Source of the DNA: Macrostomum lignano | Taxonomy: Eukaryota | Direction of reading: 5' to 3' | DNA length: 64,000 nucleotides | NCBI GenBank assembly: GCA_002269645.1 | Contig: NIVC01001815.1 | Coordinates: forward strand, 1 to 64,000 | The notes under the pieces: model-generated | What the model saw: the letters and a program-made list of their open reading frames with translations, nothing else | Told to the model about the DNA's origin: nothing | The model's database searches: none | In this document: positions 2,235 through 44,300 of the stretch, one piece after another | Numbering within the stretch: the stretch's first letter is position 1 | How the letters are laid out: every line of letters begins with the position of its first letter | Made by a program: the position numbers and the translations under genes

Positions 2235-4489
2235 TCACTCGGCCTTGACAGCCAGCGAAGCGCCAGTGGCAAACTGGTGCATCCGGAGGCGGCGTCGCAT
2301 CTCCGCCGGGTTGTGCAGCGCCTTCGTTAGCGGTGACGCTGCAGCGGCACTGCGCCGAAGGGGTCGTCGCCGACGTCGCCGTTGCTGGCAAGGCGCCGAT
2401 GCAGCCGCTTCTATCGGCGCCAGATCGATAGCCAGGGCGCGCATGTCTGCTCGAGTGAGACCGCGCGGCCCCGGCACCACAGGCGGCGCTGTGCCGCACA
2501 TCCGACGCTGATGTGCCGCGTAATTTGACGCGCAGTTGGCCAGCTCAGTCTGACCGGCCATGGCATTGATGAGGCGCCGATAGTTGGCGTCTGGTCCGTC
2601 CGAGTAGGCGGCAACTTCTCGGAGCTGACGCAGCAGCCGGCATCGGTCAGGTCTATTGTCAGAGTCGGCCAGAGCATCAACGAGGTCGAGGAGGCCTCCG
2701 CTGCCGCTTTTGCAGTCGCCTTTTGTGCAGGCAAGTTTCAAGAGACGGCGCAGCCGGCAAAGCTGCGGGCTGGACAGGCGCTCGGCTGGACACAGCGCGG
2801 GACAGCCAGTGCAGCGCACAGCCAGCGCCACAGCCCGGTCGCGCATAGTAACCAGCTCCGTCAGGCTGCTCAGCACCCACTCGAGGTCGTGGGCAACCGG
2901 CGGCGCGCGGCCTCCGCAGCCAGTCCGATAAAACTCGCGGCAGAGATCGCGCAAGTAAGCTGCCACACGCAACGCTTTGGCGTATCGGAGAGAGCCGCGA
3001 CGGTAGGCCGCAACGCTAGCCGCCAGGGTGGTAACCCGACGACTGTCGCTGCTGGTATTGTTGGGCGCTGGAGTTTGCAGCGTTGCGTCCGGGTCTGCGG
3101 CTGGGACAGCCGCCGGTACAGTTCGCTGGCAGCAGTTGTTGTTGTTAGTGCCGCTAGACTGGGCGGCTGTCGGCTGCCAGGTGCGCAGCGTCCACTGGTC
3201 CTGCGAAGCTTCCATGTCGGTGATGTTATCCCGAACGTTGCGATGCTGGTGCAGCTGCGAATTGTGCTTTGGCTGCTCCTGCGAGTCAGCGTTGTTTGCA
3301 TCATCGAGCCTGCGTTATTTGATCAGTTCGTTGCGCTACGTTAGGTTTGAGTTGATTTGATTTAATCTGGTTTACGTATAAATCCTCCCTAGATAAAAAT
3401 AAGCACTCGAGAATTGTTCAGGACATACGCAAATACGATTAATATTCTTAAAGTACTACTTAACACGTCTTTACGAGATAAAGACTAAAGTGCAAGTACG
3501 CAAGTTATGACTCACCCCAGGCTGTTTGGCAGTCGTTTTGGGAAGCTGATGCCACCGCTAGCTCCGCTGGCGCCGAAGCTCAGCATGCTGCAGCTGTTGT
3601 GTCGGTTGCCACTGTAATCATTATCGGCGTTTTCGTCGTAGCCTTCGCCGGAGAGCTCGCCCTCGCCCTCGCTACTCTTCTTAATGGACGTAACGATACC
3701 GCCGCACCTGCCGCAGGTGCCCGACTGCTGCCGTCGATTAGGTTGTCGACCTCGACCGCCCGGCTGTTTTTTCTGCTTTCCCTGCCGCCCTCTGTCTCTG
3801 CCATTGTCCACCGCGGCCATCTCGCCGAGCCGGTCCATGACCACATCCAGCATGTAACGGTCCACTGTGTCTTCACAGCGTGCACCGATGTGCTGCGCCC
3901 GCCACAGGGCGCGACTCTCGTTTTCCAGCTTGCGCCGCATCGGCGTCTGCAGCGCATTCGCCTGCTGAGCTGATGTCTTTGCTTGATCTGGCCGCCTCCG
4001 CGGGCGCCGGCTGGTCCGGTTGGCCCGGATGCTGTCCACCAGATCGGTCAGGAACCTGTCGGCTTCGGCTAATCGCCGCTGGTTCCTCGGAGCCAAGCTG
4101 AGCCCCAGCATCATGTTGTTCAGGGAGAACTCCAGCTTATCAAGCGACTTCTGGCACTTTGCCAATCGTTCAACTTGATCCTCGCTGCACTGGCTACCCT
4201 CGCCGCCTGAAAAACCAGCTGGTCCTTCGGAACTGTCATGGTCGATCTCCGTATTGTTCCAGCTTAAATCATGGTACTGAAGCTTCTTCTCCTGCTGCTT
4301 CTGCTGCTGTTGGTACTTCTGCTGATGCAGGCCAGCATCAGGCGACATCGACAGGGGCCGTGTCTGCTGCTGCATCGGCGGCTCCGGCGGATGCAGCGGT
4401 GACCAATCGTCTGGACTGACGGTGGCGAGCGAAGCGCCGCGACTTCGCTGGCGGAACAGCATCCGCCTGAGCGGCCGCTTGCTCGGCAT
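2235..4489 (-). CDS. Uncharacterised ~682-aa protein; predicted exons 4489-3516 and 3309-2235
   Basis: Two long same-strand ORFs join in frame via a GTGAGT donor at 3515 and a CAG acceptor at 3312-3310 (GG+G codon, then LDDANNADSQ...). No family recognised. Confidence 0.6.
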
Positions 4490-5411
4490 CTCTGCTGCTG
4501 GCGTTACCAAATCTTCCTGCCGTCTCTCAAGTAGCGAGAGCGAGTTGACCAAATGCCTTATAGTTAACCAAAAATTTGTTCATGCCTTAGTTCGCGCATA
4601 TAAATTTCCCTATCTGCCTTTCCCAGAAGACGCAAGTACCATAGACACTCGAGATGAATAATGAATAATTTATCAAAAACCTGCTACTTGATTGAACAAA
4701 TTTAACCGTAAAAACAGCGCATCAGCTTTGCATTTTTTCTGCGTTTGCTTTTTCGTCCCGGTGGTGTTTACAAGCAGAAGAGACTAGCTAATACGAGTAC
4801 ATGCGTACGAGTGGGTAACTTTCCTAAGCCTGTATATCCGTTTAGTTGATGGATGCAACCACAATTTTGGTTAGCCAACTGCAAATATTTAAGTAAATCC
4901 AACACAGCTGTAAGACTAATTCTTCTATTCGCTAATCCAATGAACGGAAAGAATATGAAATATGAATAATACCTTTATACCAGAACAAATACGGAAAGTC
5001 TTGCCGCAGTCTAGGACTACTTTGGGCATGAAATTTCACCGAAACTCAAGTTTATTCCAGAGTTCCCAAAAATTCGATCATTTTGACAGAAAACTCAAAT
5101 TTTGAGAATAATTTCATTTGAAATCGGATCATCCGCACACCTGGCGCATTCGCGCCTGTCCCTGAAGTTGCCTGGGAAAGGCTGCCCAGCTTTGTGTAAA
5201 TGCCCGTCGACAACTGGCACTTAAGAAGTGTTAATGCGGATGCGATTAGTGGAAATAATCCTTTGAAAGCGCAGTGCTTGGGCAGCAAAGTATTTGCGTC
5301 AAAGTAGCTGGACCGTCAGAAAACCTATAAATTAATCGATATTTTAGTCGAATATCTCCCTAGCTGACTGTTGTAGCAACAAACTGGTTACCATATTCAG
5401 ACAACTAAAGC

Positions 5412-7298
5412 ATGCGCTACAGCCTAGCTCTGAGCGCCGCTGTTCTGGCGACACTGTCGCTTGCGGTTGGCGCTGCAATCAACTTAGCCGAGTGCTTTGC
5501 CAAGGACCGGGACGCCTGCATCAACTGCGTAGTGCAGTTTAGCAACGAGAGGTACGACGAATTCTGCAAGGCCTCGCCAACCAGCAGCATGTGCGGCAAC
5601 GATGCTGGAAAAACCAACTACGTCAGCAACATTCAGAGATCCGCAAGTAACGGCTGCCCAGCTGCAGCAGCGATAGAGAAGGCAGCACAAGCAGCAGAAA
5701 CTACAACCGAAGCTCCGACAACTACCGAATCTCCAACAACTACGACCCAAGCTCTGACAACTACGACCCAAGCTGCGACAACTACGACCCAAGCTGCGAT
5801 AACTACGACCCAAGCTGCGATAACTACGACCGAAGCTCCAACAACTACAACCAAAGCTCCAACAACTACAACCGAAGCTCCAACAACTACAACCAAAGCT
5901 CCGACAACTACAACCGAAGCTCCAACAACTACAACCCAAGCTCCAACAACTACAACCAAAGCTCCGACAACTACAACCAAAGCTCCAACAACTACAACCG
6001 AAGCTCCAACAACTACAACCGAAGCTCCGACAACTACAACCAAAGCTCCAACAACTACAACCGAAGCTCCGACAACTACAACCAAAGCTCCAACAACTAC
6101 AACCAAAGCCCTGACAACTACAACCGAAGCTCCGACAACTACAACCAAAGCTCCAACAACTACAACCGAAGCTCCGACAACTACAACCAAAGCTCCAACA
6201 ACTACAACCGAAGCTCCGACAACTACAACCAAAGCTCCAACAACTACAACCAAAGCCCTGACAACTACAACCGAAGCTCCGACAACTACAACCGAAGCTC
6301 CAACAACTACAACCGAAGCTCCGACAACTACAACCAAAGCTCCAACAACTACAACCGAAGCTCCAACAACTACAACCGAAGCTTCGACAACTACAACCAA
6401 AGCTCCGACAACTACAACCAAAGCTCCAAAAACTACAACCGAAGCTCCAACAACTACAACAAAAGCCCTGACAACTACAACCGAAGCTCCGACAACTACA
6501 ACCGAAGCTCCGACAACTACAACCGAAGCTCCAACAACTACAATCGAAGCTCCAACAACTACAACCAAAGCTCCAACAACTACAACCGAAGCTCCGACAA
6601 CTAAAACCGAAGCTCCGACAACTACAACCAAAGCTCCAACAACTACAACCAAAGCTCCAACAACTACAACCAAAGCTACGACAACTACAACCGAAGCTCC
6701 CACAACTACTACTGAAGCGACGACAACAAAGCGTCCAGGACATTGTCGTGGACATGGTCATGGACATTGCCATGGACACGGTCATGGTCACGGTCATGGA
6801 AACGGTCACGGTCATGGACACGGTCATGGTCATGGACATGGTCATGGTCATGGACACGGTCACAGTCATGGCGATGATAATGACGAAGATGACAAGGACA
6901 AAGGAGGCAAGGGTAAAGGAGACAAAGGCAAGGGAAGTAAGGGCAAAGCAGGCAAGGACAGAGATGATAAGAACAGGGGTAAAAGAAGAGGATACGACAG
7001 AAGTTGGGTTGATGATGACAGTGACAGAGGCGACTGGCAAAAGCGTAGAGGCGGCTGGAGAAAGCGTAGAGGCGGCTGGAGAAAGCGTAGAGGCGGCTGG
7101 CAAAAGCGTAGAGGCGGCTGGCAAAAGCGTAGAGGCGGCTGGCAAAAGCGTAGAGGCGGCTGGAGAAAGCGTAGAGGCGGCTGGCAAAAGCGTAGAGGCG
7201 GCTGGAGAAAGCGTAGAGGTGGCTGGCAAAAGCGTAGAGGCGGCTGGAGAAAGCTTAGAGGCAGCTGGAGAAAGCGTAGCGGCAGGGGAGGCCGGTGA
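5412..7298 (+). CDS. Secreted mucin-like protein: signal peptide, 6-Cys domain, TTTT[EK]AP repeats, His-Gly block, D/K/G linker, GGW[QR]KRR repeats
   Basis: Single 628-aa ORF with a hydrophobic N-terminus (MRYSLALSAAVLATLSLAVGA); both repeat blocks have a 21-bp unit that preserves the frame. Confidence 0.85.
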   Translation: MRYSLALSAAVLATLSLAVGAAINLAECFAKDRDACINCVVQFSNERYDEFCKASPTSSMCGNDAGKTNYVSNIQRSASNGCPAAAAIEKAAQAAETTTEAPTTTESPTTTTQALTTTTQAATTTTQAAITTTQAAITTTEAPTTTTKAPTTTTEAPTTTTKAPTTTTEAPTTTTQAPTTTTKAPTTTTKAPTTTTEAPTTTTEAPTTTTKAPTTTTEAPTTTTKAPTTTTKALTTTTEAPTTTTKAPTTTTEAPTTTTKAPTTTTEAPTTTTKAPTTTTKALTTTTEAPTTTTEAPTTTTEAPTTTTKAPTTTTEAPTTTTEASTTTTKAPTTTTKAPKTTTEAPTTTTKALTTTTEAPTTTTEAPTTTTEAPTTTIEAPTTTTKAPTTTTEAPTTKTEAPTTTTKAPTTTTKAPTTTTKATTTTTEAPTTTTEATTTKRPGHCRGHGHGHCHGHGHGHGHGNGHGHGHGHGHGHGHGHGHGHSHGDDNDEDDKDKGGKGKGDKGKGSKGKAGKDRDDKNRGKRRGYDRSWVDDDSDRGDWQKRRGGWRKRRGGWRKRRGGWQKRRGGWQKRRGGWQKRRGGWRKRRGGWQKRRGGWRKRRGGWQKRRGGWRKLRGSWRKRSGRGGR

Positions 7299-8242
7299 GG
7301 TTAAAGCTGAAATCAAGAATTGACAGCTGATGCACTCACTCAATCAATGAGGTTGAGAAATTTTGCTATTGACAGGACATAACTTGGTGGTGGTAAATGC
7401 TTTATCTTGATTGAGAACTAGAACAGTAGCAAAATCGAACTTTAAAATAGACGGTTTAAAATAATCGGCTGAACGGAATAATCTACTCCGTTGATTTTGC
7501 TATAGCTTTCAAACACTTTCTATTTTTACATTAGTGTATAACTATAAGTTTACTCAATAAGATTAGCATACAGATCCGTTAATATCTGCTCATTGGTTGG
7601 GTCAATGAGGAGGCAGTAAACGAACAATGATACACTAATGCAACTATGGGCATATAAGGGTAAAAGCAAGAGATAAGTTGTAAAACCTCGTAGAATCAGC
7701 CACAAACAAGGACCGTCGAAGTTTAAAGTCGCATTAGACAGATGGCAGCGAAGTTAGCTCTTAGTACACTATGCTTTTAGTACACTTGCAGGGTTACAGG
7801 TACGCTAGACAGGGGCAAAAGCAAATGAAGTGCAACACAACATCCAGTCTACACATATCATGCTGCTGAACTTTCGCTGTACGAATATTAGACAAAATGG
7901 ATTTCAAACAGCATTGCACAAGCACATCAAAGAGGAACCACAAGAGCTGGGCAAGCTCTACTGCTTCCATGCTTCCATGCGTCTCCATTAAGCAGAGCCG
8001 TAATGATGATCAGACAAAATACACGAAAGACTAGTTCCATCATGATCATGCATTATATATGGCTTCTAAAATTCTGAATAGATACGCTCGTAGCATATCT
8101 ATAAATAGCAAGCTTGGAAAATCCTACAATCAATCACGGTAAAGAAAAAATGGAAAAAAGTTGGAAAGGTTATAGAAAAGTGCCGACAGCCATGCAACTA
8201 GATCTTAGGGTGGAATCTTGCCCTTGTTGGCCGCTTTGCATG

Positions 8243-9034
8243 CTAGCAGCATTTGCCACCGCCGGCGCCTGAAGCTCCGTCTACGTCATCCTCGCCAACA
8301 ATGATGCCGGCGTTTCGGCCAGAGGAACGTCGACCAGCTGACGTTGCGCCCTCAGACCTTGACGTGGACGACCTAGACGAGGAGCCTGGGTTGGACGCCT
8401 CCTCGGCGTCGCGACGAGCCAGCATGTCGGCTGTCAGGCGAGCGAACGCCTCTTCTACGCCGCGGTTCAGCTTAGCGGATGTGCCGCAGTGCTTGGCGCC
8501 GACCGAGCTGGCGAATTCCTCGGCATTCGCTAGCGGTACATGACGATCGCGTTCGAGGTCAATCTGTAGGGAGACAGTTTTACCAAATAGCAATACGAAC
8601 TGCAAACTGCTACCAAACAAAGACCGGTACAAATTATCTATCGTGGGGATAATATGCCCTCCCCGCAGTGTTCGCACCTTATTGCCAACTAGGTACAGTG
8701 TGACATCGTTGCCGCGAATCTTGCGCAGCTCCTTGACCCAGTTGCGCGCCTTCTCGAACGAATCCTCGTCAGTGATGTCGTAAACTAGAATAGCGCCGTC
8801 ACTATCCCGATAGTAGATTGGACCGAGGGCGTGAAAGCGCTCCTGCCCGGCCGTGTCCCAGATGTTCAGCGTCACCCGTCGGCCGGAGACGTTAAGTTTC
8901 TTAGAAAGGAACGAGGCCTGCACTGTGGTTAAGTGTTTGTCATTGAACTTATCCTCGACGTAGCGCAGCGCCAAAGAAGTTTTGCCGACACAGCCCTCGC
9001 CCAAGAGGACAATTTTAAATTCTCTGTTGGACAT
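8243..9034 (-). CDS. RAB21: Rab21 small GTPase; exons 9034-8678 and 8563-8243 (225 aa)
   Basis: G1 GEGCVGKT, G3 WDTAGQERFHALGPIYYR (Rab21-type), G4 NK/ID split by a 114-nt GT-AG intron, G5 TSAK, C-terminal CC prenylation motif. Confidence 0.92.
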   Translation of the reverse strand: MSNREFKIVLLGEGCVGKTSLALRYVEDKFNDKHLTTVQASFLSKKLNVSGRRVTLNIWDTAGQERFHALGPIYYRDSDGAILVYDITDEDSFEKARNWVKELRKIRGNDVTLYLVGNKVRTLRGGHIIPTIDNLYRSLFGSSLQFVLLFGKTVSLQIDLERDRHVPLANAEEFASSVGAKHCGTSAKLNRGVEEAFARLTADMLARRDAEEASNPGSSSRSSTSRSEGATSAGRRSSGRNAGIIVGEDDVDGASGAGGGKCC

Positions 9035-11470
9035 TACTGCAACAGTTTTTTCAATCAAATTAGCAAATAACTGTGCTTTTTAGCCGGGTAAAAAATAATT
9101 AGAGAAAGCGAAAAGATAAAAACATACAAGGGGGGCCGAGATTTGAGGTGGTGGCGTGAGGAGGTCCGCTCTGTATTCTAATTATTAAGCTTGTGCGCGG
9201 TGCGCACAGAGCTTGGTCTTCTCGTCCCCAACTCCCTGCACCAGCTCTGGTTGGTGTGTCTGTATTTCTGCACACAAATTTTAGCGTCAGGCTTCAAGGC
9301 CTCGAACACAAGCCCTCCTCCCGCTCCAGTGCCAGCCCCGCCACTTCTACTAGGACCTGCGACCCGTTTTCAGATAAGCAAACCGGCCGCCCCTTTCTCT
9401 CCGCAAATCAATGTACATTGGTTCTAATTTAAATTTCTAGTGTACATTGGATCAAATGTACACTCGTCGCGACTCGTACACACTGAACGAACGCACGGAT
9501 CTCTTTTTCCCTTCACACAGTTTTACAAGCGTACGCTCGTATAAGGCTAGATTACGACTTTACGAGACGCGCGGCAATGAGTAAATGAATTTGTAATACC
9601 TTCAACACATACGCATCGTACCATGTAATATTTAACGGATCGAATGACAGCGTTATAAAATTGTTCCAATTATTGTTCCAATTGTTCCAATTGTTCCAAT
9701 GCAAGCCAGAAAGTAAAAAGGGGATTATTCACTAAGGAAACAAAAAACAATTCAGACTAAAGATTTTTTCGAGTTTATTTTGCTTGACACAGACTGGTTA
9801 TAAAAAACGTTCGACAACAATGCACTTTATATTTTTATTGAGACAATTTTTCAGCTTTTTAAACCGAGCTGTACTGATTGTTAGCGTTGTAAACAGCGAG
9901 CTGTTTTGCACTGATAAGATAGCGGACGTCATACATAGCGATTACGGTGCGTATTTTTGAGTCTGGATTTACCAGAGAAAAACAACAAAAAAGTTGCTGC
10001 AATTAGCGCGAAATACGAGTAAATACGAGTATTAAAACAATCAGCGTCAATAGTACATGCACTTCTTGTACATGAAGTATGGTACTAATGTTTATATAGT
10101 TAACGAACTCGCCAACCAACTGACAAGCATGCAACCAGCAGTGTTGTTCATCCATTTAAGACCTGCAGTAGGTCTTTGCTAAGTTCTCCATTTACTGTTT
10201 AAGAATGATACATTTATATAGTTAAGACACTATGGCGTCACAACAACGGAATGAGTTGCTGATCGGCGGGTTTCTTAAATAAAATTTAAATCTCAAATAA
10301 AGGAAGAAGTACATGTAAAACTAAGAAACAGTCGAAAGACCACAATGGTAATTAAAACAACTCAGTGTTAACCATGAGTAAAATTTGAGTCACCGATTTT
10401 TCCTAAGGTGCAATAAGCTATCCAAAGTCACGACTACTTAGCAAGCAGTAGCAGCAAGCATGGTCTTTCGACTGTTCAAGCCACGGTAGCAATTAAATAC
10501 TTGTAAAAAAGCAAATAACGAGCAAAACAATCCTGAAAAAAATTAAAGTATTGAGTGCCCCAAAAACAGTGAAGTAAATGATACGAGGAAATGGCATATT
10601 TTACTTTAATGAGCAAGCAATAAGCATAATTGATTTGAATTTATCAAAGACAAAAGCACAATGCACTACTTGACAGCGAAGAGTTTTCTTGAGTTAATTC
10701 GCGACGAAGCAGGTAAAAGCAAGATAATAAAATTGTAATTACAACAGTGCGAGATCGCACAAAATCGTTTTTAGAAGTCAATACTAGTTCAGCTTTTGAT
10801 TAAAACTGAAAACAGAAACTTCTCACACAATGGACCAGTCTGCTTGCATAATAAAACAAAATAATACAGTAAATGACGAGGTAATATTGAATTGCGCCAA
10901 AATACTACACACTTGACTTGCCTACTGAAAGTAGCAAATACATACAGGGTGAAAATAGTGAAAGCTATGTAATTTTATAAGAACAATTTTTTACCAAAAC
11001 TTTATAATATAGGAAGACGTAGACAACAAGATATTCTGTCTAGAATAGAATATAGCCTAGTGCTTTGTCCGTAAACTAATACGTACTAATACGGAGTATC
11101 AATACTAAAAAACTTGATTCACCGATCGAACTGAGTCAAGACAGATTGAACGAGTATTTATCTTAAGCTGCACTGTGAAAGAGAAAATGATAAATGGCGA
11201 GAAAGACGAGGCGATTATGACGACAGAATTAAGAAGTATAGTCTCTTTGAGATCTTAGTTGAATTTATTAGAAGACAACTGACACAAAAATTCAAACAAT
11301 CATAACAACAATAACGATAGCAACGGCCATACCACCCAAAACCCCCTGCTCTGGAAGCGCGGCTATCCCTCACCCGGATCGTTCAATGGATACATTGACA
11401 ACTTCCTGTATAGGCCAGTGATTGAGTAGGTTGAACATTTTGAAGAAAAATATCTAGCAGAATTGATGGA

Positions 11471-14400
11471 TCACACGTCCATTGTCTGGCCGCCAGCAGC
11501 TGGGCCTTGGCCCGATGCCGCCCCATCGGTGGGCCTCGACTCGCAGCAGCAGCAACGAGACGAGCAGACGCAGCAAGAGCAGTATTGAGCTGCCCGTTTC
11601 ATCAGCTTCTGGCGATGCTCCTGACGCTGATGTTGCCGATCTGACAGTTTCATCTTCTTGAGCCGCTTCAATCGCTGCACGCCGGGGTCTGACACAGTTG
11701 ACTTCAGCGGCGTTGACGGCTTAAAAGCTGCGACCGCATCTGCTGCTGCTGCTGCGTTGGCTTCGCCCTCAACTTCGACAATGTTGTCGAGACTGTGCAC
11801 GCTGTGTCTAACCAGCAGATTGTTCAGTGTGCGATTTTTCTTCATCCGGCCCTGGTAGACGTCTCTGTGCTCTTCGCTATAGCGGCCGAATATCACAACT
11901 AAAGCTCCGAATACGGCGAAAGCGGTAAGGCTGAGCAGGAACGAGCTGAGCTTCACGTACAGCGGGTAGCCGGTGTAGCGCGAATGGGTCCAGATGTCCT
12001 TAGACAGAAGGGTCTCGCCGTCTGGCGCAAAAGTCTGATTTCTGTACTCATAGTTAAGCGTGTGATTGTCGCTGCTGCAATCTACTAGTGCGAGTTCGGT
12101 CTCGTTGTGCACGGTGTAGATGGAGCCGTAAGGTCCGACGTATTGGCCGTATTCGCAGGGCGAGTAGATCATCTGATAAACGGGTTGAGTATTGGTATGA
12201 TTAGCAGAGTGAAGAAGAGCATGCTTGCAAAAATTAAAAATAGCTTGCTGGCAAAAGCTTTGGGGTTTGTCAAGCTTGGTGTTTGTGAAGTATAGGGCTT
12301 GTCAAGCTTGGTGTTTGTGAAGTTTAGGGCTTGTCAAGCTTGGTGTTTGTGAAGTATAGGGCTTGTCAAGCTTGGTGTTTGTGAAGTATAGGGCTTGTCA
12401 AGCTTGGTGTTTGTGAAGTTTAGGGCTTGTCAAGCTTGGTGTTTGTGAAGTTTAGGGCTTGTCAAGCTTGGTGTTTGTGAAGTTTAGGGCTTGTCAAGCT
12501 TGGTGTTTGTGAAGTTTAGGGCTTGTCAAGCTTGGTGTTTGTGAAGTATAGGGCTTGTCAAGCTTGGTGTTTGTGAAGTATAGGGCTTGTCAAGCTTGGT
12601 GTTTGTGAAGTTTAGGGCTTGTCAAGCTTGGTGTTTGTGAAGTTTAGGGCTTGTCAAGCTTGGTGTTTGTGAAGTATAGGGCTTGTCAAGCTTGGTGTTT
12701 GTGAAGTTTAGGGCTTGTCAAGCTTGGTGTTTGTGAAGTTTAGGGCTTGTCAAGCTTGGTGTTTGTGAAGTATAGGGCTTGTCAAGCTTGGTGTTTGTGA
12801 AGTTTAGGGCTTGTCAAGCTTGGTGTTTGTGAAGTATAGGGCTTGTCAAGCTTGGTGTTTGTGAAGTTTAGGGCTTGTCAAGCTTGGTGTTTGTGAAGTT
12901 TAGGGCTTGTCAAGCTTGGTGTTTGTGAAGTTTAGGGCTTGTCAAGCTTGGTGTTTGTGAAGTTTAGGGCTTGTCAAGCTTGGTGTTTGTGAAGTATAGG
13001 GCTTGTCAAGCTTGGTGTTTGTGAAGTATAGGGCTTGTCAAGCTTGGTGTTTGTGAAGTTTAGGGCTTGTCAAGCTTGGTGTTTGTGAAGTATAGAGCTT
13101 GTCAAGCTTGGTGTTTGTGAAGTATAGGGCTTGTCAAGCTTGGTGTTTGTGAAGTTTAGGGCTTGTCAAGCTTGGTGTTTGTGAAGTATAGAGCTTGTCA
13201 AGCTTGGTGTTTGTGAAGTATAGGGCTTGTCAAGCTTGGTGTTTGTGAAGTTTAGGGCTTGTCAAGCTTGGTGTTTGTGAAGTTTAGGGCTTGTCAAGCT
13301 TGGTGTTTGTGAAGTATAGGGCTTGTCAAGCTTGGTGTTTGTGAAGTATAGGGCTTGTCAAGCTTGGTGTTTGTGAAGTTTAGGGCTTGTCAAGCTTGGT
13401 GTTTGTGAAGTTTAGGGCTTGTCGAGCTTGTGCACGTAGAAATAGGAGATTTCGGCTACGCATTTCCAACCCCTTAATCTAATTATTCTTCTAAACCCCA
13501 AAACCTGACTAACCTGATTCTTCCACATGTTCAAATCCAGACACATAACTACGAACAGTACTCCATAGTTGAACCATTTCCCGGTGATATGCACCGTCCA
13601 AACGTCGTCGTCGACAATCCGTTTAAACCAGTCCGGTATGCGGATATCGAACGCGTAGATAGCCTTGGCTACGCCGGGCAGCCGAACGTCAAGGCTGTTA
13701 GTGAAGTTAGGAAAGTCCCAATCCTGCATGACAATCAGCAGGTCAAGGCTCAGAATTGATGCAGCTAAGAAAGCCCGCGACAGTTCGTTTGACGGAGCAA
13801 AGCCCCTGTTGAGGTAGTCCCAGCGGATGATGTCGGTGCAGATCACTGTGATAACGGTGGTGCACAAGCTGATTAGCAGCAGCCAGAACATGACGATCCG
13901 AGTGTAGCCAGAGCGCCACCACTGCCGGATGAAGCGGTTCCAGCTTGGATAAAGACGCTCCTGCAGCATCATGTCGCTCACCATCCAGGCGGTCATGAAG
14001 TCGCCAAGCCAGGTGCCTGTGGCTGCCATCTTCATGAACGTGGAGTTCTTGATGCCCATCTGCATACTGATGAGATAGGGGATGTTGGACGTGCCGCCGA
14101 GGGTCAGCAGGAAAGCGTTGTAAATGTTGGAGAAAATGTACACGGATATGATGGTTGAGAACCACATTGTCATCCAGGAGCCTTCGTCGTTAGCAAACAT
14201 TTTCAGCCGAAACCAACGGTCTGAAAGTTGTAGGTTTGTACAATTCTTGTTTAATACATTGGATATTTTTAGCCACCCAGCGAATTTGCCGATGATTCTG
14301 CCACTTCACCTAAACAATTTAAACAAATAAGCAAAGAGTTTGACTTAAGACAGTCTCACTGAACACAAATACGTGACACAGTTTTCCAGCGATGATGCCA

Positions 14401-15470
14401 ACCAGGATTCCCAGCAGCCACATGATCACTTTGAGCAGACTCCATGCGTTGGGCGGATACCGGCTGAAAACGAATGCGAACACGTTGCCTAACACGGGGA
14501 TGCTGCACACCTGCGACGAGTCGGCTATGGGATCCTCGGCGTAGATTAGGAAGTTAAGAAAAACGACTAGTAAAGTGCAGATCATGCGCAGGTAGGGATG
14601 CTGAAAGTAGAACCTAGCATCGTGCACCATGTACAGCGAGTACTGGCTAAGCCGATCAATGTCTACGGGGTCAATGGTCGAGCTGAACGAGCCAGGCCGG
14701 TTCAGACAGGACGGCGTGTGCAAGTGCCGAGCCGATGGCGAGCCCTGGGACCCATCGGCGCCGGTCGTCACCGGTGCCTGCGACCTGGATGATGACACAA
14801 CCGAAGAAGAGTCATCGTTTTCAAAGATGTCCTTGTTATCGTTGGCGTTGTCGTCCTTGGTAGCCGACGTTGTTGATGGCTCAGCCACCTCCGTCTGTGT
14901 CTGTGACTCCGGTCCCGGCGCCGCGCTGTCCTTAATGCCTTCAACGGAGTCGTCACCGACGGATGTCAATCTTCCACTGGCCTCGGCATCGTCGGCTGTT
15001 GCGGCGGCAGAAGCTGCCATTGCAGCAGCCGCAGCAGCCGCCTGAGCAGTCGATGGTACCGACATTTGGCGCCTGTGCCGCGCCGGAGGCCCACGCCGCC
15101 CGAGTTCGAAGACGACTCCACTTTCACCAGTGCCACCGCCGCTGCTGCCATTGCCACCGTCAGCGATGTCAGACAGCTGGCGCATCAACGAACGCCGTCT
15201 GTACGATGTGGACTGATGTTCTTGGTGCTGCGCCAGTGCCTGTTGTTGCCTAGGCAACCTCTGCCCCGGCGTTGGGCTGCAAACTGCCGAGTTGGGCGCG
15301 GTTGGCCCAGTCCGCTTCTCACGCACCTTTAGCCGGCCGGCGTCGCGCCATTTGATTGACATCCGCCTAACCAACTCACGGTCGCTCAAGCTGGTTGCTA
15401 GGTCGACCATCTCAGCTGGCGGCTGCGGCTGCGTTGGCTCCGCGGAAGCCGCATGCTGCTGAGCAGCCAT
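11471..15470 (-). CDS. TMEM117: Transmembrane protein 117 homologue; exons 15470-14360, 14220-13514 and 12172-11471 (839 aa)
   Basis: Motifs RFYFQHPYLRM, AEDP, GSWMTMWFST, GTWLGDFMTAWMVSDMMLQ, DLLIVMQDWDFP, HITGKWFNYG, DLNMWKNQ and EYGQYVGP match TMEM117 as I recall it. Canonical splice sites restore one frame (2520 nt). Confidence 0.92.
12262..13429. repeat. 32-bp minisatellite AGGGCTTGTCAAGCTTGGTGTTTGTGAAGT(A/T)T, ~36 copies, in TMEM117 intron 2
   Basis: Direct reading; the period is 32 (GTCAAGCTT at 12301 and 12333). Confidence 0.95.
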
Positions 15471-26672: not shown

Positions 26673-27733
<1,061 letters not shown>

Positions 27734-38369: not shown

Positions 38370-41300
38370 GGCAATGGTGCGGGGCCAGTTAGGGCGGTCC
38401 GCCAGTACGTATTGCAGCGTTCTCTTCGTTTGGGAAGAAAGAGGCTCGTCTAGTTGCCCGTAGGAACCGGACGAACGTCATCGATAGATTGTAGTTTCGT
38501 AGGTTTGAACCGAGGTGGTTAAGTCGCTCCCTGGTGAAAAACGGGCATTGACAAAGAAATGATTAGCATCTTCATTGTCGTACTCGCAAAATGGGCACAG
38601 TTCATTCCGGATGTCGGCCCCGGAGAAAGCAGTGCCTAGCGAAGCAGCCATGCCCCGTGAGGGTCATAGCAAGAGCCCGGATGTCCTTCCTGCTTTGGTT
38701 CAGGAGGACAGTTTGGAGCTTTCGGGATGGACGAGCGACCGCCGCACGTGATTGGCGGCAGGTGGTCAGGTTCATCCATCTGTCCCTGTGCAGGTCGGAG
38801 GCCCAGGCATCAATGCTACGATTGATGGTGGCCGCAGGGATTGGAGCCAAGGGCAGAGGTCCCAGAAGGGAGCCGCTGCTCCCTTGCTTTGCAAGCGAGT
38901 CGGCCAGCTCGTTTCCAGGGAAACCCGCGTGACCTGAGATCCATTTGAGCTGGACAGCATTTTTGCGTCCCAGCGTAATGAGCATCCGGACGCAGTCAGA
39001 GACCGTCCGGGAGGCCGTAGTGGTGTGACAGAGGGCTAGCAGAGCCGCCTGGCTGTCGGAGTGAAAACGATATAGTTTTTCCGGAGGTGTTTTTGCTGCA
39101 AAGCTCTGCAGCGCAAGAGCTAATAGCAAGGACCTCGTTCTGGAAGACAGTAGAGAGTCTTCCAGTGTGCTGGGCATGCGTGGCGAGCACGCGGCCATTG
39201 ATGAGAATGCAGATCCCAAAGCCGGAGAGACAGTCTTTTAGGGATCCGTCTGTGTAGCAGTGGACCTCCTGGGGATTCCAGTGGTCGTTAGCCTCCTCTC
39301 CATGAGGAAGAATGACCTTGAATTGAAGACAGAGGTTGAGCGTTCGAGGTTCCCCGTCCGAAAGGACGTTGAGGCCGCCACTCTCCTGCAGATCTTTGAG
39401 ACAGAGGTCGGAATGAGACAAAAGCTTGCGCTTAGCCACTGCCCTCTGGGGCTTGAGAGTAATGCCGGTGTCGATGAGACGCCGGGCTGCTTTGGCTGCC
39501 TCCCTGCGGACGAAAATGTCCAGTGGAGGCAGGTCAAGGAAGGCGTTGAGGCCGTCGAAGGGAGCCGAGGGCGGGGCGCCCATCATCATTCGACATGCAC
39601 GCCCCTGCACTCGTTTAAGAGCCTCGAAGCAGGTCTTAATCTGCAGGGCACTCGCCCAGATCAGTCCGGCATAGGAGATCGCCGGCCTGACCATAGCAAT
39701 GTAGATCCACCATAGGCGTTTGGGGTAAGGCCCCAAGTATGGCCAACCGCCCTGCGCAGTTGCGCCAGGATCGCGAAGGCCTTCTTAGTCTTGGCATGAA
39801 CATGCGGGGACCAGTTCAGCCTGTGATCAAGGGTGACCCCAAGACACTTGACTTGCTTACGGAAGGGGATTTCCTGTCCGTAGAGCGTGAGATGGCGGGA
39901 TTGCCACTTCGTCCTGCTGGTGAACATAACCACAGCGGTCTTAGTCTCGGAGAGCTTCAGACCGCATTGGTCCGCCCAACGTTCAGCAGTGTTGATGAAG
40001 TTCTGAAGGAGATCACGCAGGGTGTCCGGCGATGGCCCAGAGGCTACCGCCGTGACATCGTCCGCATAACCGACCTTCAGAATAGGGTTAGGACAGGCGT
40101 CCCGTAGGAGCTCGTCGATAACCATGTTCCAGAGAATTGGAGAGAGAACACCACCCTGCGGACAGCCTTTGCAGACGGGAACCGTCCGTTCATGACCTAG
40201 CAGGTGTGCCGTAGCAGATCTGTGGCTAATCATGTACATGATCCAGCGCGTGAGGTGAGAATGTGTCATTCTCGTTTGTAGAAAAGGACGTTGTCAAAGG
40301 CTCCCACGATATCCAGGAAGACCGCTAGGGCATAGCCGTTGCACAAGCACAGCTTTCTCCAGCGTGTCCACCAGGATATGCAGCGCACTTTCGCTGGAGA
40401 GTCCCGCCCGAAAAGCATGCTGGTTTTTACTAAGCGGCATGTTCTTTAGTTCCACGGACTGCAGGCGCCAGAGCACCAGCCGTTCCATCAGTTTGACCAT
40501 CGAGGAGGTCAAGCTGATTGGTCGAAAGGATTTAACAGAATGGTAGTCCGGGCGGCCGGGCTTAGGAATGAAAATCACCCTCACCTCAGTCCACGGCTTC
40601 GGGACACAACCAAACGTAATGCAGGCTTTAAGAAGCTTGCACAGGTGCATGAGGAACCTCTTGCATTGGACCGCCTCTCTGATTAGGGCTGGTACGATGC
40701 CTCGGGTCCAGGCGCCTTGTAAGGCTTGAAGGAGTTTGCAGCTTTGATGATGCGCTTCTTCGTGATAAAGGAGGAGGCAAGAAACGACCCGCCTTCGGCA
40801 TGGTCCGAGGGGTCATTTGTGAGAGCCTCGTTGGGGAAGGAGGCTGAAAGCATAAGCTCTAGCGTCTCCCCAGGGTTCTCGATATGCGTGCCATCGGCCC
40901 GCTTTACCGAGGAAAGTTTGGATATTTTGTCCAAGGTCAGCGCTTTTACTATGCGGGATGTAGGGCGTGCGCCCTCCAGTTCCTCACAGTATTCACGCCA
41001 TTTGTTAGCCTTAGCGTTCCTGACCTCCTTTTTGAACTCATGAATTGCTTCAAGGTAGGCGGTCTCGCTGGGCGTTTAGATTTGGTGGCCCTGCGATGTA
41101 ACCGTTTGGCTTTGCGGCGAAAGTCGCCACTCTTGGGGTTCCACCACGGGGCCGACGTTTTGCCCCTGTAGGCTTTAAGCGGGCAGGAGGCCTCGAAAGC
41201 AGAGGTTAGCGAATCCGTGAGAACAGCCGCATAATCCTCCGTTTCTTGGCACGAATCAATGGAGGTAGGAAAGCTGGAAGGTAGGTGTTCCAAAGGGTTG

Positions 41301-44300
41301 CGTCCAGGGTGAACTTGAAGGCCTCCCAATCGGTGTCCCTAGCATTCCGTCTCCAGATGATACGGTCATTGCGCTGTGCGCTGGCCACGTTAAAGGAGAT
41401 GAGCTTGTGGTCAGAGAGAGACGCCACGCGAAGGACCCGCCACTCGTCAATCCTCTGGTAGAGTCTTGGTGTGGCAAGTGTGGCATCGATGACCTCCGAC
41501 CAACGCCCGTTGTCGAAAGTAGGGGTGTTGCCTGAGTTGCAGAACTCAAGCGTGGTGGTGGCAACATAAGTCTGGAGGTCTTCACCTCTCTGATTAATGT
41601 TTGTGCTGCCCCAGTGAGTATGGTGAGCATTTATATCGCCAGCAACCATTAGCTCGTAGTTTCTGGCAGAACAGAGTTCCACCAGCGAGATAAGCTCTTA
41701 AGCCCCCGCGATTCTTGCGCAGCTGCGCAGAGCCGTCGGCACCACCTGGGGCCTTACCCGAAACGGCTCTGGTGGATCTATACCGCAATGGTCCGACCGG
41801 CCGTTACTTACGCAGGCCTGGTCTGGACCAGCGCCTTGCAAATTAAAACCTGCCACGAAGCCCTCAAAAAGGTGCAGGGACGTGCGTGCCGCATGATCCT
41901 GAATGCCCCGCTCTCTGCTCCCTTTGACGGCCTCAACGCCTTTCTTTGCCTCCCGCCTCTGGACATCTTTGTCCGTCGCGAGGCTGCTAAAACCACCCGC
42001 CGGCTCATCGAGGCTGGCGTTAGCTTCAAGCCACAAAGAGCGATGGCGAAGCGCAAGCTCCTGCCGCACTCTGACCTGAGCCTTAAAGTTCTGGAGGAGA
42101 GTGGGAATGCGGCTGTCCTTTCGGACGCTGAGCCGCGCTCCCTCAATCTCTACCAACGCTTCAAGGTCACTATCCCTCTAGGGAGAACGCCGACGACAGC
42201 TGGGCCCCTCAGGAGGTTCACTGCTTTACTGACGGATCCTCCAAAGACGGTTTAAAAGAGTCTGCATCCTTATCAACGGCCGCGTGATCGCTACTCACGC
42301 CCAACACACTGGCAGACTCTCCAGCGTCTTCCAGAACGAAGTCCTTGCCATCAGCTCCTGTGCAGCTGAGCTCCACTGCAGGGATTTCAAGGACAGAAGA
42401 ATTTTCTTCCACTCTGACAGCCAGGCCACTTTGCAGGCCCTGTGTCACACCACTACGAACTCCCGAACAGTCCGCGACTGTATCGGGCAGCTCAGCAAGC
42501 TGGCTCGGAGGAACACCGTCCGGCTTACGTGGATCCCAGGACACGCCGGCTTCAAAGTTAATGAGCTCGCCGACTCCCTCGCTAAGGCGGGCTGTTCCGG
42601 CTCGCCCCTTGGCCCCGTGCCCCTGGCCCCCATCCCCGCCACAGTCATTAATCGTGAGATTAACGACTGGGTGGACATCCTGCACTTGCGCAGATGGGAT
42701 GGTATCTCCAACTGCCGCCAATCTCGTGCGGCAGTGCCCAATCCGTCCCTCAAGCTGCGGAGAATCCTTTTGAACCAAAATCGAAAAGATATCCGCGCTC
42801 TCACTATGACCTTCACAGGTCACGGTTGCTTTGCCAGGCACTGTTTCCTCCGAAGTTCCCGCCGGAGCGAACTCTGCCATTTCTGCAACCTCGAGAACGA
42901 AGACGCCAAGCACTTCGTCTGCTACTGCCCGGCCTTCAACCGAGACTGGCTCAACTACCTCGGGCCCAACCCGTCCCTGGACGACGTTTGCCGGCCCGAG
43001 AACATCCCACGGCTCATCCGGTTTCTCCGGGCCACCAAGCGAGCCTCCGTCTTCCCCACCGAAGACAACGCTGCAGACAGGACCGGCAGACCTCCCTGAC
43101 CGGCCCCGCGCCCTAGCCTATGCGGGTTTTTCAGGGATTAGCGGAATGGGCGACGCTCGCCTCCCTGCTGCGTCTTCGGGCCGCCCTGCAGCTAAGTCAA
43201 GTAAGTCAAGAAGAGATAAGCTCTTCCGAGACAACAGCCTTGTCTCCCGGTAAATAAACCGAGGCGATCAGGGCCGTCTTTCCCGGTAGGAGGTTTTCCG
43301 TTTGATGACGCAGAGGTCCCCATTTGAAAGGTCTCCTCTGAGCCAAGCATTGAAGGAGTTCACCACGTAGATGCAAGCTCTAGGTGGCGGTGTTCCTTCT
43401 CTTGGGCATGTGCTAAAACACTGATACCCACCGGGCATGTGTTGGGGCTTTCCTTTAACAGTCCAAGGTTCTTGGACTAGGATGAGACCCGGCTTGTCAC
43501 GCTCGGCATGCCTGATGAGGTTCACCGAAGCTGCGACGCTGTGCTGCAGATTTATCTGCAGACATTCGACCCCTGTAGCATTACTAGACATGGCTAGTTG
43601 CTCGAGGATTCGCGTAGCAGCTCCTCTTCCATCTCTTCTGAGATAGAGGGTCTGCTGACCTCCATGGGCTCCTCATAATCCACAGCGTGCGGCGCGGAGA
43701 GCGTGGTGGTGCCTGCGGCTGGCGAGAGCCTGGACCGCTTCGCTTCACCCTCCTCATCCTGTGCCGCAGCGTGGACGCTGGGGGAGTCCTGAACCGAGCT
43801 GGCGGGCAGGTCATGGTTGGCGGTGGTTTCTGCCTGATGGCCGGATTCCTCAGCCCAGTCAGTACCCGCCGAACCATCACTTCCTGACCCACACAGCCCG
43901 GTTTGAGGAGGGTCTTTTTCGGCGCGTCGACGCTCCAGGTGTTCCAGGAGGTCGTGGGCCTGCGCCGGCGCACGCTGAACCAGACCCGACTTGCGAGTGC
44001 TGCGGGCAGGTTTTCGGCAGCACGAACTGCCTTATTAAGGTGGAGATCCACCGACCGCAGGTCTTGGGCAGCCGCGTCCTTTCCCTTGGGAGGTGCGGTG
44101 CGCTTAGTCGGCTTAGCTTCAGCCTTACCTTCCTCGCATCGGAGGAAAGTCAGCTGATGCAGGCCGATGCAGATGGTGTTGTGCGGAACCCGCTTAGACC
44201 ATTCGTCAGAGAGCCCCATGATCGCCGTAAAGCCCTCCGCACCTTTCCGGGCGGAGCCATGGCAGTAGAGCTCACTGGCGTTAAGGTCAGGGAAGCGGTT

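What the first reader, a model, noticed from the sequence alone, without database searches (positions are those of the whole stretch)
5412..7298. Modular secreted protein: Cys domain, E/K-patterned mucin rod, His-Gly block and Trp/Arg tail
Seen: signal peptide, 6-Cys globular domain, ~45-50 heptads TTTT[E/K]AP with mixed negative and positive residues, then 20 His in 45 residues, an acidic-then-basic linker and 12 W-containing basic heptads. Established: His-Gly-rich proteins bind Zn/Cu and harden structures such as polychaete jaws and squid beak, and aromatic/cationic low-complexity sequences drive coacervation in bioadhesives. Inference: one chain combining an O-glycosylated brush, a metal cross-linking block and a cation-pi coacervating tail is a strong candidate for an undescribed mucus, glue, rhabdite or eggshell component.
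Basis: partly seen in the sequence, partly recalled or inferred. Interest (0 to 1): 0.72.

Follow-up and report, generated by a model that had tools for sequence, protein, structure and literature searches.

The report
Orphan secreted mucin with polycationic tail
A single-exon animal gene encodes a secreted, threonine-rich mucin-like protein ending in a His-Gly block and a very basic Trp/Arg repeat; every module is really there, no relative of the protein was found anywhere, and its role as glue, anchored mucus or defence molecule is still a guess.

Summary
ORF 5412-7298 (+) encodes 628 aa:
- a signal peptide;
- a 75-aa domain with 6 Cys, predicted helical;
- about 49 heptads of TTTT[E/K/Q]AP;
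- a 45-aa block with 20 His;
- a charge-balanced D/K/G linker;
- 12 heptads of W[Q/R]KRRGG, net charge +42.

It looks like a real gene, not one of the window's many open minisatellites. The unique 5' part has exon-like GC3. All three arrays have periods divisible by 3. Variation in the HG array is almost entirely synonymous. A TATAAA lies 86 nt upstream of the ATG.

No homologue exists for the Cys domain (1.84 billion representatives) or for the tail (5.8 billion clusters). Full-length hits are only compositional Thr-rich linkers.

The host is an unidentified animal, with Rab21, TMEM117 and cadherin genes as neighbours. Nothing points to a flatworm.

Best reading: a secreted, O-glycosylated brush whose polycationic Trp/Arg tail binds polyanions, by anchoring or complex coacervation, while the HG block acts as a pH/metal switch.

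The glue idea is plausible but untested. A host-defence mucin is a serious rival. I rate it a new variant of a known kind, of moderate interest.

The parts
5326..5331 (+). TATAAA box, 86 nt upstream of the ATG (putative core promoter)
   Evidence: An in-frame TAA lies 6 nt upstream of the ATG, so the ORF cannot extend 5' within this exon.
5412..7298 (+). Complete single-exon CDS, 628 aa plus TGA
5412..5474 (+). Signal peptide, aa 1-21 (MRYS + hydrophobic core + VGA|A)
   Evidence: mean KD 2.09 over aa 5-21. Judged by inspection, not by a trained predictor.
5475..5699 (+). Orphan 6-Cys helical domain, aa 22-96
   Evidence: AF2 single-sequence model has pLDDT 83 with helices at 4-8, 12-33, 43-59 and 61-73. 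No homologue. GC 0.57 and GC3 0.65 are exon-like.
5700..6734 (+). Thr/Pro mucin-type rod, aa 97-441, about 49 heptads TTTT[E/K/Q]AP, net charge -2
   Evidence: TRF 21 bp x 49.1. Unit table. Composition.
6735..6869 (+). His-Gly block, aa 442-486, with 20 His, 19 Gly and 2 Cys
   Evidence: Of 18 differences between copies, 15 are at codon position 3. AF2 predicts it disordered.
6870..7034 (+). Acidic/basic Gly-Lys linker, aa 487-541, net charge 0, containing an R-G-K-R furin-type site at 522-525
7035..7295 (+). Polycationic Trp/Arg heptad tail, aa 542-628: (W[Q/R]KRRGG) x about 12, net +42, 11 RGG motifs, Arg at i-4, i-3, i+3 and i+4 of nearly every Trp
   Evidence: TRF 21 bp x 12.3.. AF2 predicts one long helix over aa 539-623 with pLDDT 78-90. 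No similar protein found.

Best explanation
Layer 1, about 0.75-0.8: this is a genuine, lineage-restricted, single-exon gene of an unidentified animal. Its product enters the secretory pathway. After signal-peptide removal it consists of a small disulfide-bonded helical head, a rod of about 345 aa that is densely O-glycosylated and therefore extended (a mucin-type bottle-brush), and a disordered C-terminal effector region.

Layer 2, about 0.4, inferred: the C-terminus works as a two-stage attachment and cross-linking device. The (W[Q/R]KRRGG)12 tail carries +42 charge and has a Trp flanked by four Arg in every heptad. It binds polyanions with high avidity through charge and cation-pi contacts. 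Candidate polyanions are sulfated or sialylated glycans (including those on neighbouring rods), matrix glycosaminoglycans, and negatively charged substrates or microbial surfaces. The result is either condensation of the secretion into a complex coacervate or gel, or anchoring of the glycan brush to a surface.

The (HG)n block, with a pKa near 6.5 and two Cys, would be protonated and repulsive in an acidic secretory granule. At external pH it would become neutral and able to chelate Zn or Cu, giving a pH/metal-triggered switch from stored to cross-linked state.

The product would therefore be a component of a secreted mucus, adhesive or coat. Shown here: the sequence anatomy, the signals of coding constraint and the absence of homologues. 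Inferred: secretion, glycosylation, metal binding, polyanion binding and biological role. The confidence value given (0.4) refers to layer 2, the specific mechanism.
For: Evidence that it is a gene:
- The unique 5' 288 nt have GC 0.57 and GC3 0.65. Bona fide exons in the window have GC3 0.65-0.87, while the flanks have GC 0.38-0.40.
- All three arrays inside the ORF have periods of 21, 6 and 21 bp. Only 2 of the 26 other arrays in the window have a period divisible by 3.
- In the HG array 15 of 18 differences between copies fall at codon position 3, giving 13 synonymous against 3 non-synonymous codons (binomial p = 2e-5). The same changes would alter amino acids in the antisense frame.
- TATAAA lies at -86 and an in-frame stop at -6.
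- The other frames of the unique part contain stops.

Evidence for secretion and mucin character:
- An N-terminal hydrophobic signal with a small-residue cleavage motif.
- No C-terminal hydrophobic segment and no N-glycosylation sequon.
- The rod is 56% Thr and 11% Pro.
- Identical TTTTEAP linkers occur in secreted astacins, peritrophins and mucin-13.
- The Drosophila glue mucin Sgs3 uses O-glycosylated PTTTK repeats, and PTTTK versus PTTTE peptides are glycosylated by different PGANT9 isoforms (PMC6115407; PMC9409817).

Evidence on the C-terminus:
- Charge bookkeeping and Arg/Trp geometry.
- AF2 predicts a disordered HG block and linker and a confident periodic helix for the tail.

Analogies from the literature:
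- Zn/pH-dependent curing by His-rich proteins in Nereis jaw and mussel glue (PMC9465683; PMC13022425).
- Cation-pi driven coacervation of a Gly-rich tick cement protein (bioRxiv 10.1101/2023.03.27.534361).
Against: - There is no transcript, orthologue or paralogue of any kind, so conservation cannot be shown and the function rests on composition alone.
- The repeat units are highly homogenised and young. In the rod and tail the main variable sites are non-synonymous (E/K and R/Q).
- This genome generates long ORFs in minisatellites readily.
- No canonical AATAAA occurs in the 945 bp downstream; only variants such as AGTAAA and AATAAT are present.
- Five R-X-K/R-R sites, four in the tail and one in the linker, could be cut by furin-type convertases in the secretory pathway, which would destroy the proposed device.
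- The tail does not match the strict Cardin-Weintraub heparin-binding consensus, apart from its two degenerate last units.
- The AF2 models are single-sequence, and long helices for periodic charged repeats are a known over-prediction.
Confidence: 0.4

Rival explanations
1. Host-defence mucin. The rod places the protein in the mucus layer. The His/Gly block and the Trp/Arg tail are antimicrobial modules, acting either while tethered or after release by convertase cleavage at the R-G-K-R site (aa 522-525) that precedes a short acidic stretch and the cationic tail.
For: Gly/His-rich peptides such as shepherin I are Zn-enhanced antimicrobials (PMC10698721). Arg/Trp-rich cationic sequences are a classic antimicrobial and membrane-active composition (established knowledge; reviews listed). 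An acidic stretch followed by a cationic C-terminal peptide, with furin-type sites between them, resembles antimicrobial-peptide precursors. The tail has net +42 and 12 Trp.
Against: With only one hydrophobic residue per heptad and two Gly, amphipathicity is low. The acidic stretch (VDDDSDRGD) is far too short to neutralise +42. There is no homology to any antimicrobial-peptide family. No expression or induction data exist.
Confidence: 0.2
2. Not a functional gene. A cluster of three minisatellites happens to lie next to a short open sequence. It is either a very young de novo ORF or non-coding DNA that is not translated, or is translated without a selected function.
For: About 21% of the window is tandem arrays, and several carry ORFs of 200-616 aa. 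The antisense strand of this locus is also open for 619 aa. There is no homologue anywhere and no gene model with this product in the collection. No canonical poly(A) signal is present. The rod and tail arrays are nearly homogeneous, so they carry little information about selection.
Against: Three adjacent arrays all have periods divisible by 3 and share one frame. A signal peptide and a Cys domain with exon-like GC3 sit exactly at the 5' end, behind a TATA box. Variation in the HG array is strongly biased to third codon positions. AF2 folds the Cys domain with pLDDT 83 from a single sequence, which is unusual for random sequence.
Confidence: 0.15
3. Matrix protein of a hardened or mineralised structure (jaw, tooth, stylet, shell, spicule or egg capsule). 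The HG block supplies metal cross-links. The acidic and basic blocks nucleate mineral or silica, or bind to it.
For: His-rich blocks harden Nereis jaws through Zn (PMC9465683, PMC10230509). Modular low-complexity architecture with Cys, acidic and basic modules is typical of biomineral matrix proteins, and polycations promote silica deposition (established knowledge, not tested here).
Against: The HG block is only 7% of the chain. More than half of the protein is a hydrophilic glycosylated rod, which suits a hydrated gel, not a hard composite. There is no homology to known matrix proteins. The organism, and hence its hard parts, are unknown.
Confidence: 0.1
4. Polyprotein precursor. The tail is cut at its repeated KRR/RKRR sites into many copies of a tiny peptide (GGW or GGWQ after carboxypeptidase trimming) that acts as a signalling or bioactive peptide.
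For: There are 12 near-identical units, each ending in K-R-R. Four canonical R-X-K/R-R sites lie in the tail and one in the linker. Multi-copy precursors with dibasic spacers are the rule for neuropeptides (established knowledge).
Against: No Gly precedes the basic residues, so there would be no amidation. The products would be only 3-4 residues long. Neuropeptide precursors do not carry a 345-aa mucin rod or an HG block. No homologue was found.
Confidence: 0.05

Closest known systems
Drosophila salivary glue mucin Sgs3 (and Sgs1/Sgs4/Eig71Ee)
   Same: Both are secreted, have Cys-containing non-repeat ends, and carry a long Thr/Pro tandem repeat with a charged residue in every unit (PTTTK against TTTT[K/E]AP). 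Sgs3 is O-glycosylated, stored in secretory granules and evolves fast by changes in repeat number (PMC6115407; PMC9409817).
   Different: No sequence homology was detected. Sgs3 repeats are uniformly cationic, whereas here E and K are mixed to near neutrality. Sgs3 has no His-Gly block and no Trp/Arg tail. This animal is not shown to be an insect.
His-rich, metal-cured structural and adhesive proteins (Nereis Nvjp-1; mussel mefp-12)
   Same: A His-rich segment able to give a pH- and Zn-dependent transition from storage to cross-linked state in a secreted material (PMC9465683; PMC13022425).
   Different: In those proteins the His-rich character extends over the whole protein or over folded coiled-coil and Zn-finger-like domains. 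Here it is one 45-aa (HG)n stretch, predicted disordered, attached to a mucin. No homology was found.
Gly/His-rich and Arg/Trp-rich antimicrobial peptides (e.g. shepherin I)
   Same: The composition of the HG block closely resembles shepherin-type GH repeats with Zn-dependent activity (PMC10698721). The tail has the R/W/K composition of cationic membrane-active peptides.
   Different: Those are short free peptides. Here the modules are the C-terminus of a 628-aa glycoprotein, the tail has low hydrophobicity (1 Trp in 7 residues), and no activity was tested.
Tick cement glycine-rich protein (tick-GRP77)
   Same: A secreted, disordered, Gly-rich sequence whose C-terminal Arg/aromatic residues drive condensation through cation-pi contacts, and whose charged N-terminal part delays it (bioRxiv 10.1101/2023.03.27.534361).
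   Different: The tick protein undergoes simple coacervation in salt. A +42 tail with no acidic residues probably needs a polyanionic partner. The tick protein has no mucin rod and no HG block, and there is no homology.
Generic Thr-rich PTS linkers in secreted enzymes and peritrophins (e.g. P0001, an astacin with TTTTEAP repeats; mucin-13; chitin-binding peritrophins)
   Same: The heptad TTTTEAP is identical or nearly so, which is why these proteins dominate the full-length search.
   Different: The matches are confined to the repeat. The flanking domains (astacin, SEA, CBM14, LPXTG) are absent here. These hits reflect convergence, not homology.

Membership tests
Mucin-type (PTS-domain) secreted glycoproteins, a functional class and not a homology family | N-terminal signal peptide | tested here: met
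   MRYS + 17-residue hydrophobic core + VGA|A. Judged by inspection only; no trained predictor was available.
Mucin-type (PTS-domain) secreted glycoproteins, a functional class and not a homology family | Long tandem-repeat region dominated by Pro/Thr/Ser | tested here: met
   aa 97-441: 55.9% Thr, 11.3% Pro, 67.8% S+T+P; 49 heptads.
Mucin-type (PTS-domain) secreted glycoproteins, a functional class and not a homology family | Dense O-GalNAc glycosylation of the repeats | not testable with these tools
   Inferred from analogy with the PTTTK and PTTTE peptides that are PGANT9 substrates (PMC6115407).
Gel-forming mucins (MUC2/MUC5 type) | VWD-C8-TIL assemblies and a C-terminal cystine knot | tested here: not met
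   Pfam scan of the full protein found 0 families.
Membrane-tethered mucins | SEA domain and/or transmembrane or GPI anchor | tested here: not met
   No Pfam hit. The C-terminus is ...WRKRSGRGGR, with no hydrophobic segment.
Drosophila Sgs glue family | Sequence homology of the non-repeat Cys-rich ends | tested here: not met
   The N-terminal domain has no real hit among 1.84 billion representatives. No Sgs protein appears in the full-length search.
Gly/His-rich jaw and beak proteins (Nvjp-1 type) | Gly+His dominate the whole mature protein | tested here: not met
   The HG block is 45 of 628 aa, 7%. His is 3.2% of the chain.
Gly/His-rich jaw and beak proteins (Nvjp-1 type) | Zn/Cu binding that changes mechanics | not testable with these tools
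   Needs recombinant protein.
Cardin-Weintraub heparin-binding motifs | XBBBXXBX or XBBXBX consensus | tested here: not met
   A regex finds one match of each, only in the two degenerate last units (aa 612, 619). The 10 canonical heptads read X-B/Q-B-B-B-X-X. High cationic density remains, so polyanion binding is still expected.
RGG/RG-box disordered regions | Clustered RGG tripeptides | tested here: met
   11 RGG between aa 546 and 627. RGG boxes are typical of nuclear RNA-binding proteins, whereas this chain carries a signal peptide, so the resemblance is compositional only.
C-mannosylated Trp repeats (TSR type) | W-x-x-W/C motif | tested here: not met
   None present; Trp spacing is 7.

The most novel reading that the evidence does not exclude
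The W[Q/R]KRRGG heptad may be a previously undescribed extracellular structural motif. In it each Trp would be sandwiched by Arg at i±3 and i±4, forming a continuous Arg-Trp cation-pi ladder along one face of a long helix. That helix might form only on binding a polyanion. Together with an (HG)n pH/metal switch and a charge-neutral glycan brush, it would make a one-chain, self-contained 'store, release, stick, cure' adhesive or anchoring system unrelated to DOPA-based glues.
Probability: 0.15. Interest if true: 0.7.

Novelty: new variant of a known kind. Interest (0 to 1): 0.42.

Why it matters
If expressed, this is a compact natural design of 628 aa on one exon. It joins three separable materials-science modules: a near-neutral polyampholyte glycan brush, a His-Gly pH/metal switch, and an unusually regular Arg/Trp polycation that has no counterpart in about 5.8 billion protein clusters.

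It would add a DOPA-independent example to the list of biological wet adhesives or surface-anchored lubricants. Alternatively, it would be an example of a mucin carrying built-in antimicrobial modules.

It is also a clean case for studying how taxon-restricted secreted genes arise from minisatellites in a repeat-rich genome.

Without the organism's identity or any expression data the importance stays potential, and many invertebrate genomes hold comparable orphan low-complexity secreted proteins.

Tried and rejected
1. Exact look-up of the 628-aa product and of a neighbouring ORF in the 15-billion-protein and 153-billion-gene collections: not on record. The source genome is not in the collection, or not with these gene models.

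2. Full-length homology search: 359 hits, all explained by the Thr-rich repeat. They include astacins, mucin-13, peritrophins, bacterial LPXTG and collagen-binding proteins and glycoside hydrolases. I rejected them as compositional after reading P0001 and P0006.

3. Exhaustive HMMER search with the Cys domain: one hit at E = 2.8e-4 to a repetitive 189-aa artefact-like protein (P0121), rejected.

4. Tail-only search: nothing at E <= 1e-3.

5. Pfam: nothing above noise. PDB sequence search: nothing. Foldseek against PDB with the AF2 model: best E = 8.

6. Metagenome scans with a tail DNA pattern and with Cys-domain peptides: nothing.

7. tblastn of the N- and C-terminal parts against the window: no paralogue in the 64 kb.

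8. Rfam and tRNA scans for lineage-diagnostic RNAs: nothing.

9. Organism identification through TMEM117: best identity is only 59%, spread over several phyla. A flatworm origin is unsupported, and the phylum remains unresolved.

10. Literal search of 8 million papers for the heptad strings: no relevant paper.

11. Higher-order periodicity in the rod: none of note. The E/K order is not significantly different from random mixing (z = 1.78), so 'E/K-patterned' means well mixed, not blocky.

12. The antisense ORF 5484-7343 as the real gene: rejected. It has a TTG start and no signal peptide. It is also interrupted by a stop inside the signal-peptide region, and the variation in the HG array would be non-synonymous in that frame.
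Full report
**1. What is in the sequence**

An uninterrupted ORF runs from ATG 5412 to TGA 7296-7298 on the + strand and encodes 628 aa.

- Residues 1-21 form a signal-peptide-like N-terminus: MRYS, then a 17-residue hydrophobic core with mean Kyte-Doolittle 2.09, then VGA|A.
- Residues 22-96 are non-repetitive and contain six Cys (28, 36, 39, 52, 61, 82).
- Residues 97-441 are the Thr rod. TRF reports a 21-bp unit x 49.1 copies, 89% matches and no indels. There are 46 clean TTTT[E/K/Q]A units: 22 E, 19 K and 5 Q. The rod has 55.9% Thr, 11.3% Pro and net charge -2.
- Residues 487-541 are a D/K/G linker with 17 acidic and 17 basic residues.
- Residues 542-628 are about 12 heptads of W[Q/R]KRRGG, with 42 K/R, no D/E, 12 Trp and 24 Gly. 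A thirteenth Trp lies at 532.

E and K are well mixed, not blocky: 27 runs against 21.4 expected, longest run 3. There is no marked higher-order repeat.

**2. Is it a gene or just open repeats?**

This matters here. About 21% of the window is tandem arrays. One 20-bp array carries a 616-aa ATG ORF (59576-61426). The antisense strand of the finding is itself open for 619 aa. ORF length is therefore worthless as evidence. Five other observations favour a real + strand gene.

- (a) The unique 5' 288 nt have GC 0.57 and GC3 0.65. That resembles the Rab21, TMEM117, ALDH and cadherin exons of the window (GC3 0.65-0.87) and differs from the flanks (GC 0.38-0.40).
- (b) The three arrays inside the ORF have periods of 21, 6 and 21 bp and share one frame. 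Only 2 of the other 26 arrays in the window have a period divisible by 3.
- (c) The HG array is the most diverged of the three (73% matches). In it, 15 of 18 differences from the consensus lie at codon position 3, giving 13 synonymous against 3 non-synonymous codons (p = 2e-5). In the antisense frame the same changes fall on first codon positions. The caveat is that unit duplications make these counts non-independent.
- (d) A TATAAA lies at 5326, 86 nt upstream of the ATG, and an in-frame TAA 6 nt upstream closes the frame.
- (e) AF2 folds residues 22-96 from a single sequence into a four-helix domain with mean pLDDT 83.

Several points count against a real gene. There is no canonical AATAAA downstream, only variants. 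The rod and tail arrays are so homogeneous that they carry little signal of selection, and their main variable sites are non-synonymous (E/K, R/Q). No transcript or orthologue is available. I put 'real, secreted protein' at about 0.75-0.8.

**3. Context**

The window is from an animal.

- A Rab21 orthologue lies on the - strand at 8243-9058 (E = 4e-61 to human Rab21 structures) and converges tail-to-tail on the gene.
- TMEM117 lies in three exons at 11471-15470 (-).
- Pieces of a non-LTR retrotransposon, an aldehyde dehydrogenase exon and a cadherin first exon follow.
- Upstream, two ORFs without Pfam matches lie on the - strand (2235-4552).

The gene thus occupies its own slot of about 3.7 kb between neighbouring genes, from 4552 to 8243.

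The TMEM117 exon is only 54-59% identical to its best hits, which include a sea slug, reptiles, fishes, a priapulid and anthozoans. There is no flatworm among the 80 hits, and no near-identical entry. The source species is therefore not represented in the collection and its phylum is unresolved. The 'rhabdite' suggestion has no support.

**4. Relatives**

None were found.

- The exact product is not on record.
- The full-length search returns 359 hits that all align only to the Thr repeat. They carry unrelated domains: astacin, SEA, CBM14, fibrinogen, LPXTG anchors and GH16. They come from bacteria to fish. One transcript-derived astacin (P0001) has the identical TTTTEAP heptad. This is convergence on a common O-glycosylated linker.
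- The Cys domain finds nothing real among 1.84 billion representative proteins, nothing in PDB by sequence or by fold, and nothing in metagenome contigs.
- The Trp/Arg tail finds nothing at E <= 1e-3 among 5.8 billion clusters, nothing in metagenome DNA and nothing in the literature as a string.
- There is no paralogue in the window.

**5. How it most likely works**

Shown directly by the sequence:

- a secretory signal;
- no membrane anchor and no N-glycosylation sequon;
- a Thr/Pro rod of the type that GalNAc-transferases glycosylate densely;
- a near-neutral rod, a neutral linker and a +42 tail.

By established mucin biophysics, such a rod is stiff and extended, roughly 0.25 nm per residue or about 85 nm. 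That figure is my own estimate from general knowledge.

The mixed E/K units are notable in the light of work on Drosophila Sgs3. There, PTTTK and PTTTE peptides are glycosylated by different PGANT9 splice forms, and repeat glycosylation controls granule packing (PMC6115407).

For the C-terminus I infer a two-stage device.

- The (HG)n block has an imidazole pKa near 6.5. It would be cationic in an acidic granule and would become a neutral metal chelator outside. This is the logic documented for Zn/pH curing by Nvjp-1 and mussel mefp-12.
- The tail is a very dense polycation in which every Trp has Arg at i-4, i-3, i+3 and i+4.
- AF2 predicts the HG block and linker as disordered. It predicts the tail (aa 539-623) as one continuous helix at pLDDT 78-90.
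- In a helix this spacing would stack Arg-Trp-Arg along one face. I treat the helix as a hypothesis, because this is a single-sequence model of a periodic charged repeat with two Gly per heptad.

In either conformation a +42 segment should bind sulfated or sialylated glycans, glycosaminoglycans, nucleic acids, anionic surfaces and microbial envelopes strongly. Because it lacks any acidic residue, it is more likely to condense with a polyanionic partner than alone. The tick cement protein is a different case: cation-pi contacts drive simple coacervation in salt there.

The outcome would be a gel or glue, or a glycan brush anchored to an anionic matrix. Confidence in this mechanism is about 0.4.

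**6. Rivals**

- (i) Host-defence mucin (0.2). Gly/His repeats such as shepherin I are Zn-dependent antimicrobials, and R/W-rich cations are classic membrane-active peptides. A furin-type R-G-K-R site at 522-525, followed by a short acidic stretch and the cationic tail, resembles an antimicrobial-peptide precursor.
- (ii) Not a functional gene (0.15); see section 2.
- (iii) Matrix protein of a hard or mineralised part (0.1). This is weakened by the short HG block (7% of the chain) and the dominant hydrated rod.
- (iv) Multi-copy peptide precursor cut at KRR (0.05). This is weakened by the lack of an amidation Gly and by products of only 3-4 residues.

**7. Comparison with what is known**

Functionally the protein belongs to the broad class of secreted PTS-repeat mucin-like proteins. 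The signal peptide and PTS criteria are met. Glycosylation could not be tested.

- It is not a gel-forming or membrane mucin: no VWD, CK, SEA or transmembrane segment.
- It is not an Sgs family member: no homology.
- It is not an Nvjp-type protein, because Gly/His do not dominate the chain.
- Its canonical heptads do not fit the strict Cardin-Weintraub consensus.
- It has 11 RGG tripeptides, but in an extracellular context.

The closest working analogues are Drosophila Sgs3 for the rod, mefp-12 and Nvjp-1 or shepherin for the HG block, and tick GRP or R/W peptides for the tail. No known protein combines them.

**8. Verdict**

A secreted, modular, mucin-like and undescribed protein: yes. Glue, rhabdite or eggshell: untested, and the flatworm implication is unsupported.
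- Novelty: a new variant of a known kind, namely an orphan mucin-type secreted protein with an unprecedented C-terminal module pair.
- Interest is moderate at 0.42. The Trp/Arg heptad tail is genuinely unusual and easy to test in vitro. Against that, orphan low-complexity secreted proteins are common in invertebrate genomes, and nothing here ties this one to a biological role.

Noticed in passing
window 1-64000: About 13.2 kb (about 21%) of the window lies in 29 tandem arrays with periods of 4-44 bp. They include (CAGA)x213 at 26673-27523 and a 20-bp unit x 74.6 at 59629-61127. Only 2 of the 26 arrays outside the finding have a period divisible by 3.
   Followed up: partly
window 59576-61426 (+): A 616-aa ATG ORF lies entirely inside a 20-bp minisatellite, just upstream of the cadherin exon. 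It has no signal peptide and is almost certainly non-coding. It shows that long ORFs in repeats are cheap in this genome.
   Followed up: partly
window 5484-7343 (-): An antisense ORF of 619 aa (TTG start, Cys/Ser/Phe/Gly/Trp-rich) spans the whole finding. I judged it an artefact of low complexity.
   Followed up: yes
window 8243-9058 (-): A Rab21 orthologue (E = 4e-61 to human Rab21 structures). The ORF reads through what looks like an in-frame unspliced intron at about 8560-8674 and ends in a GGGKCC prenylation motif. It converges tail-to-tail on the mucin-like gene.
   Followed up: partly
window 11471-15470 (-): A TMEM117 gene in three exons (15470-14319, 14200-13412, 12172-11471). The intron between the last two is filled by a 32-bp unit x 36.6 minisatellite (12259-13430) whose unit contains TTTAGGG. 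The best database identity is only 54-59%, so the species is not represented.
   Followed up: partly
window 38600-45300: A GC-rich block with non-LTR retrotransposon fragments: RT at 39661-40269 (-), and RNase H at 38602-39219 (-) and 42284-43099 (+) in inverted orientation. This suggests two copies, or a rearranged element.
   Followed up: no
window 49367-50065 (+): An aldehyde dehydrogenase exon (Pfam Aldedh, E = 5.5e-50) runs directly into an 18-bp minisatellite (49788-50023) that keeps the frame open.
   Followed up: no
window 61535-62689 (+): A cadherin-repeat first exon with its own signal peptide (protocadherin-like). GC3 is 0.87, the highest in the window.
   Followed up: no
window 2235-4552 (-): Two long ORFs (326 and 346 aa) without Pfam matches, divergent from the mucin-like gene. 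They are Arg/Gln-rich and of unknown function. The 326-aa product is not on record in the gene collection.
   Followed up: partly
P0001 (eukprot transcript): An astacin metalloprotease from an unrelated eukaryotic transcriptome carries dozens of identical TTTTEAP heptads followed by a Lys-rich C-terminus. It is a striking case of convergent linker sequence.
   Followed up: partly
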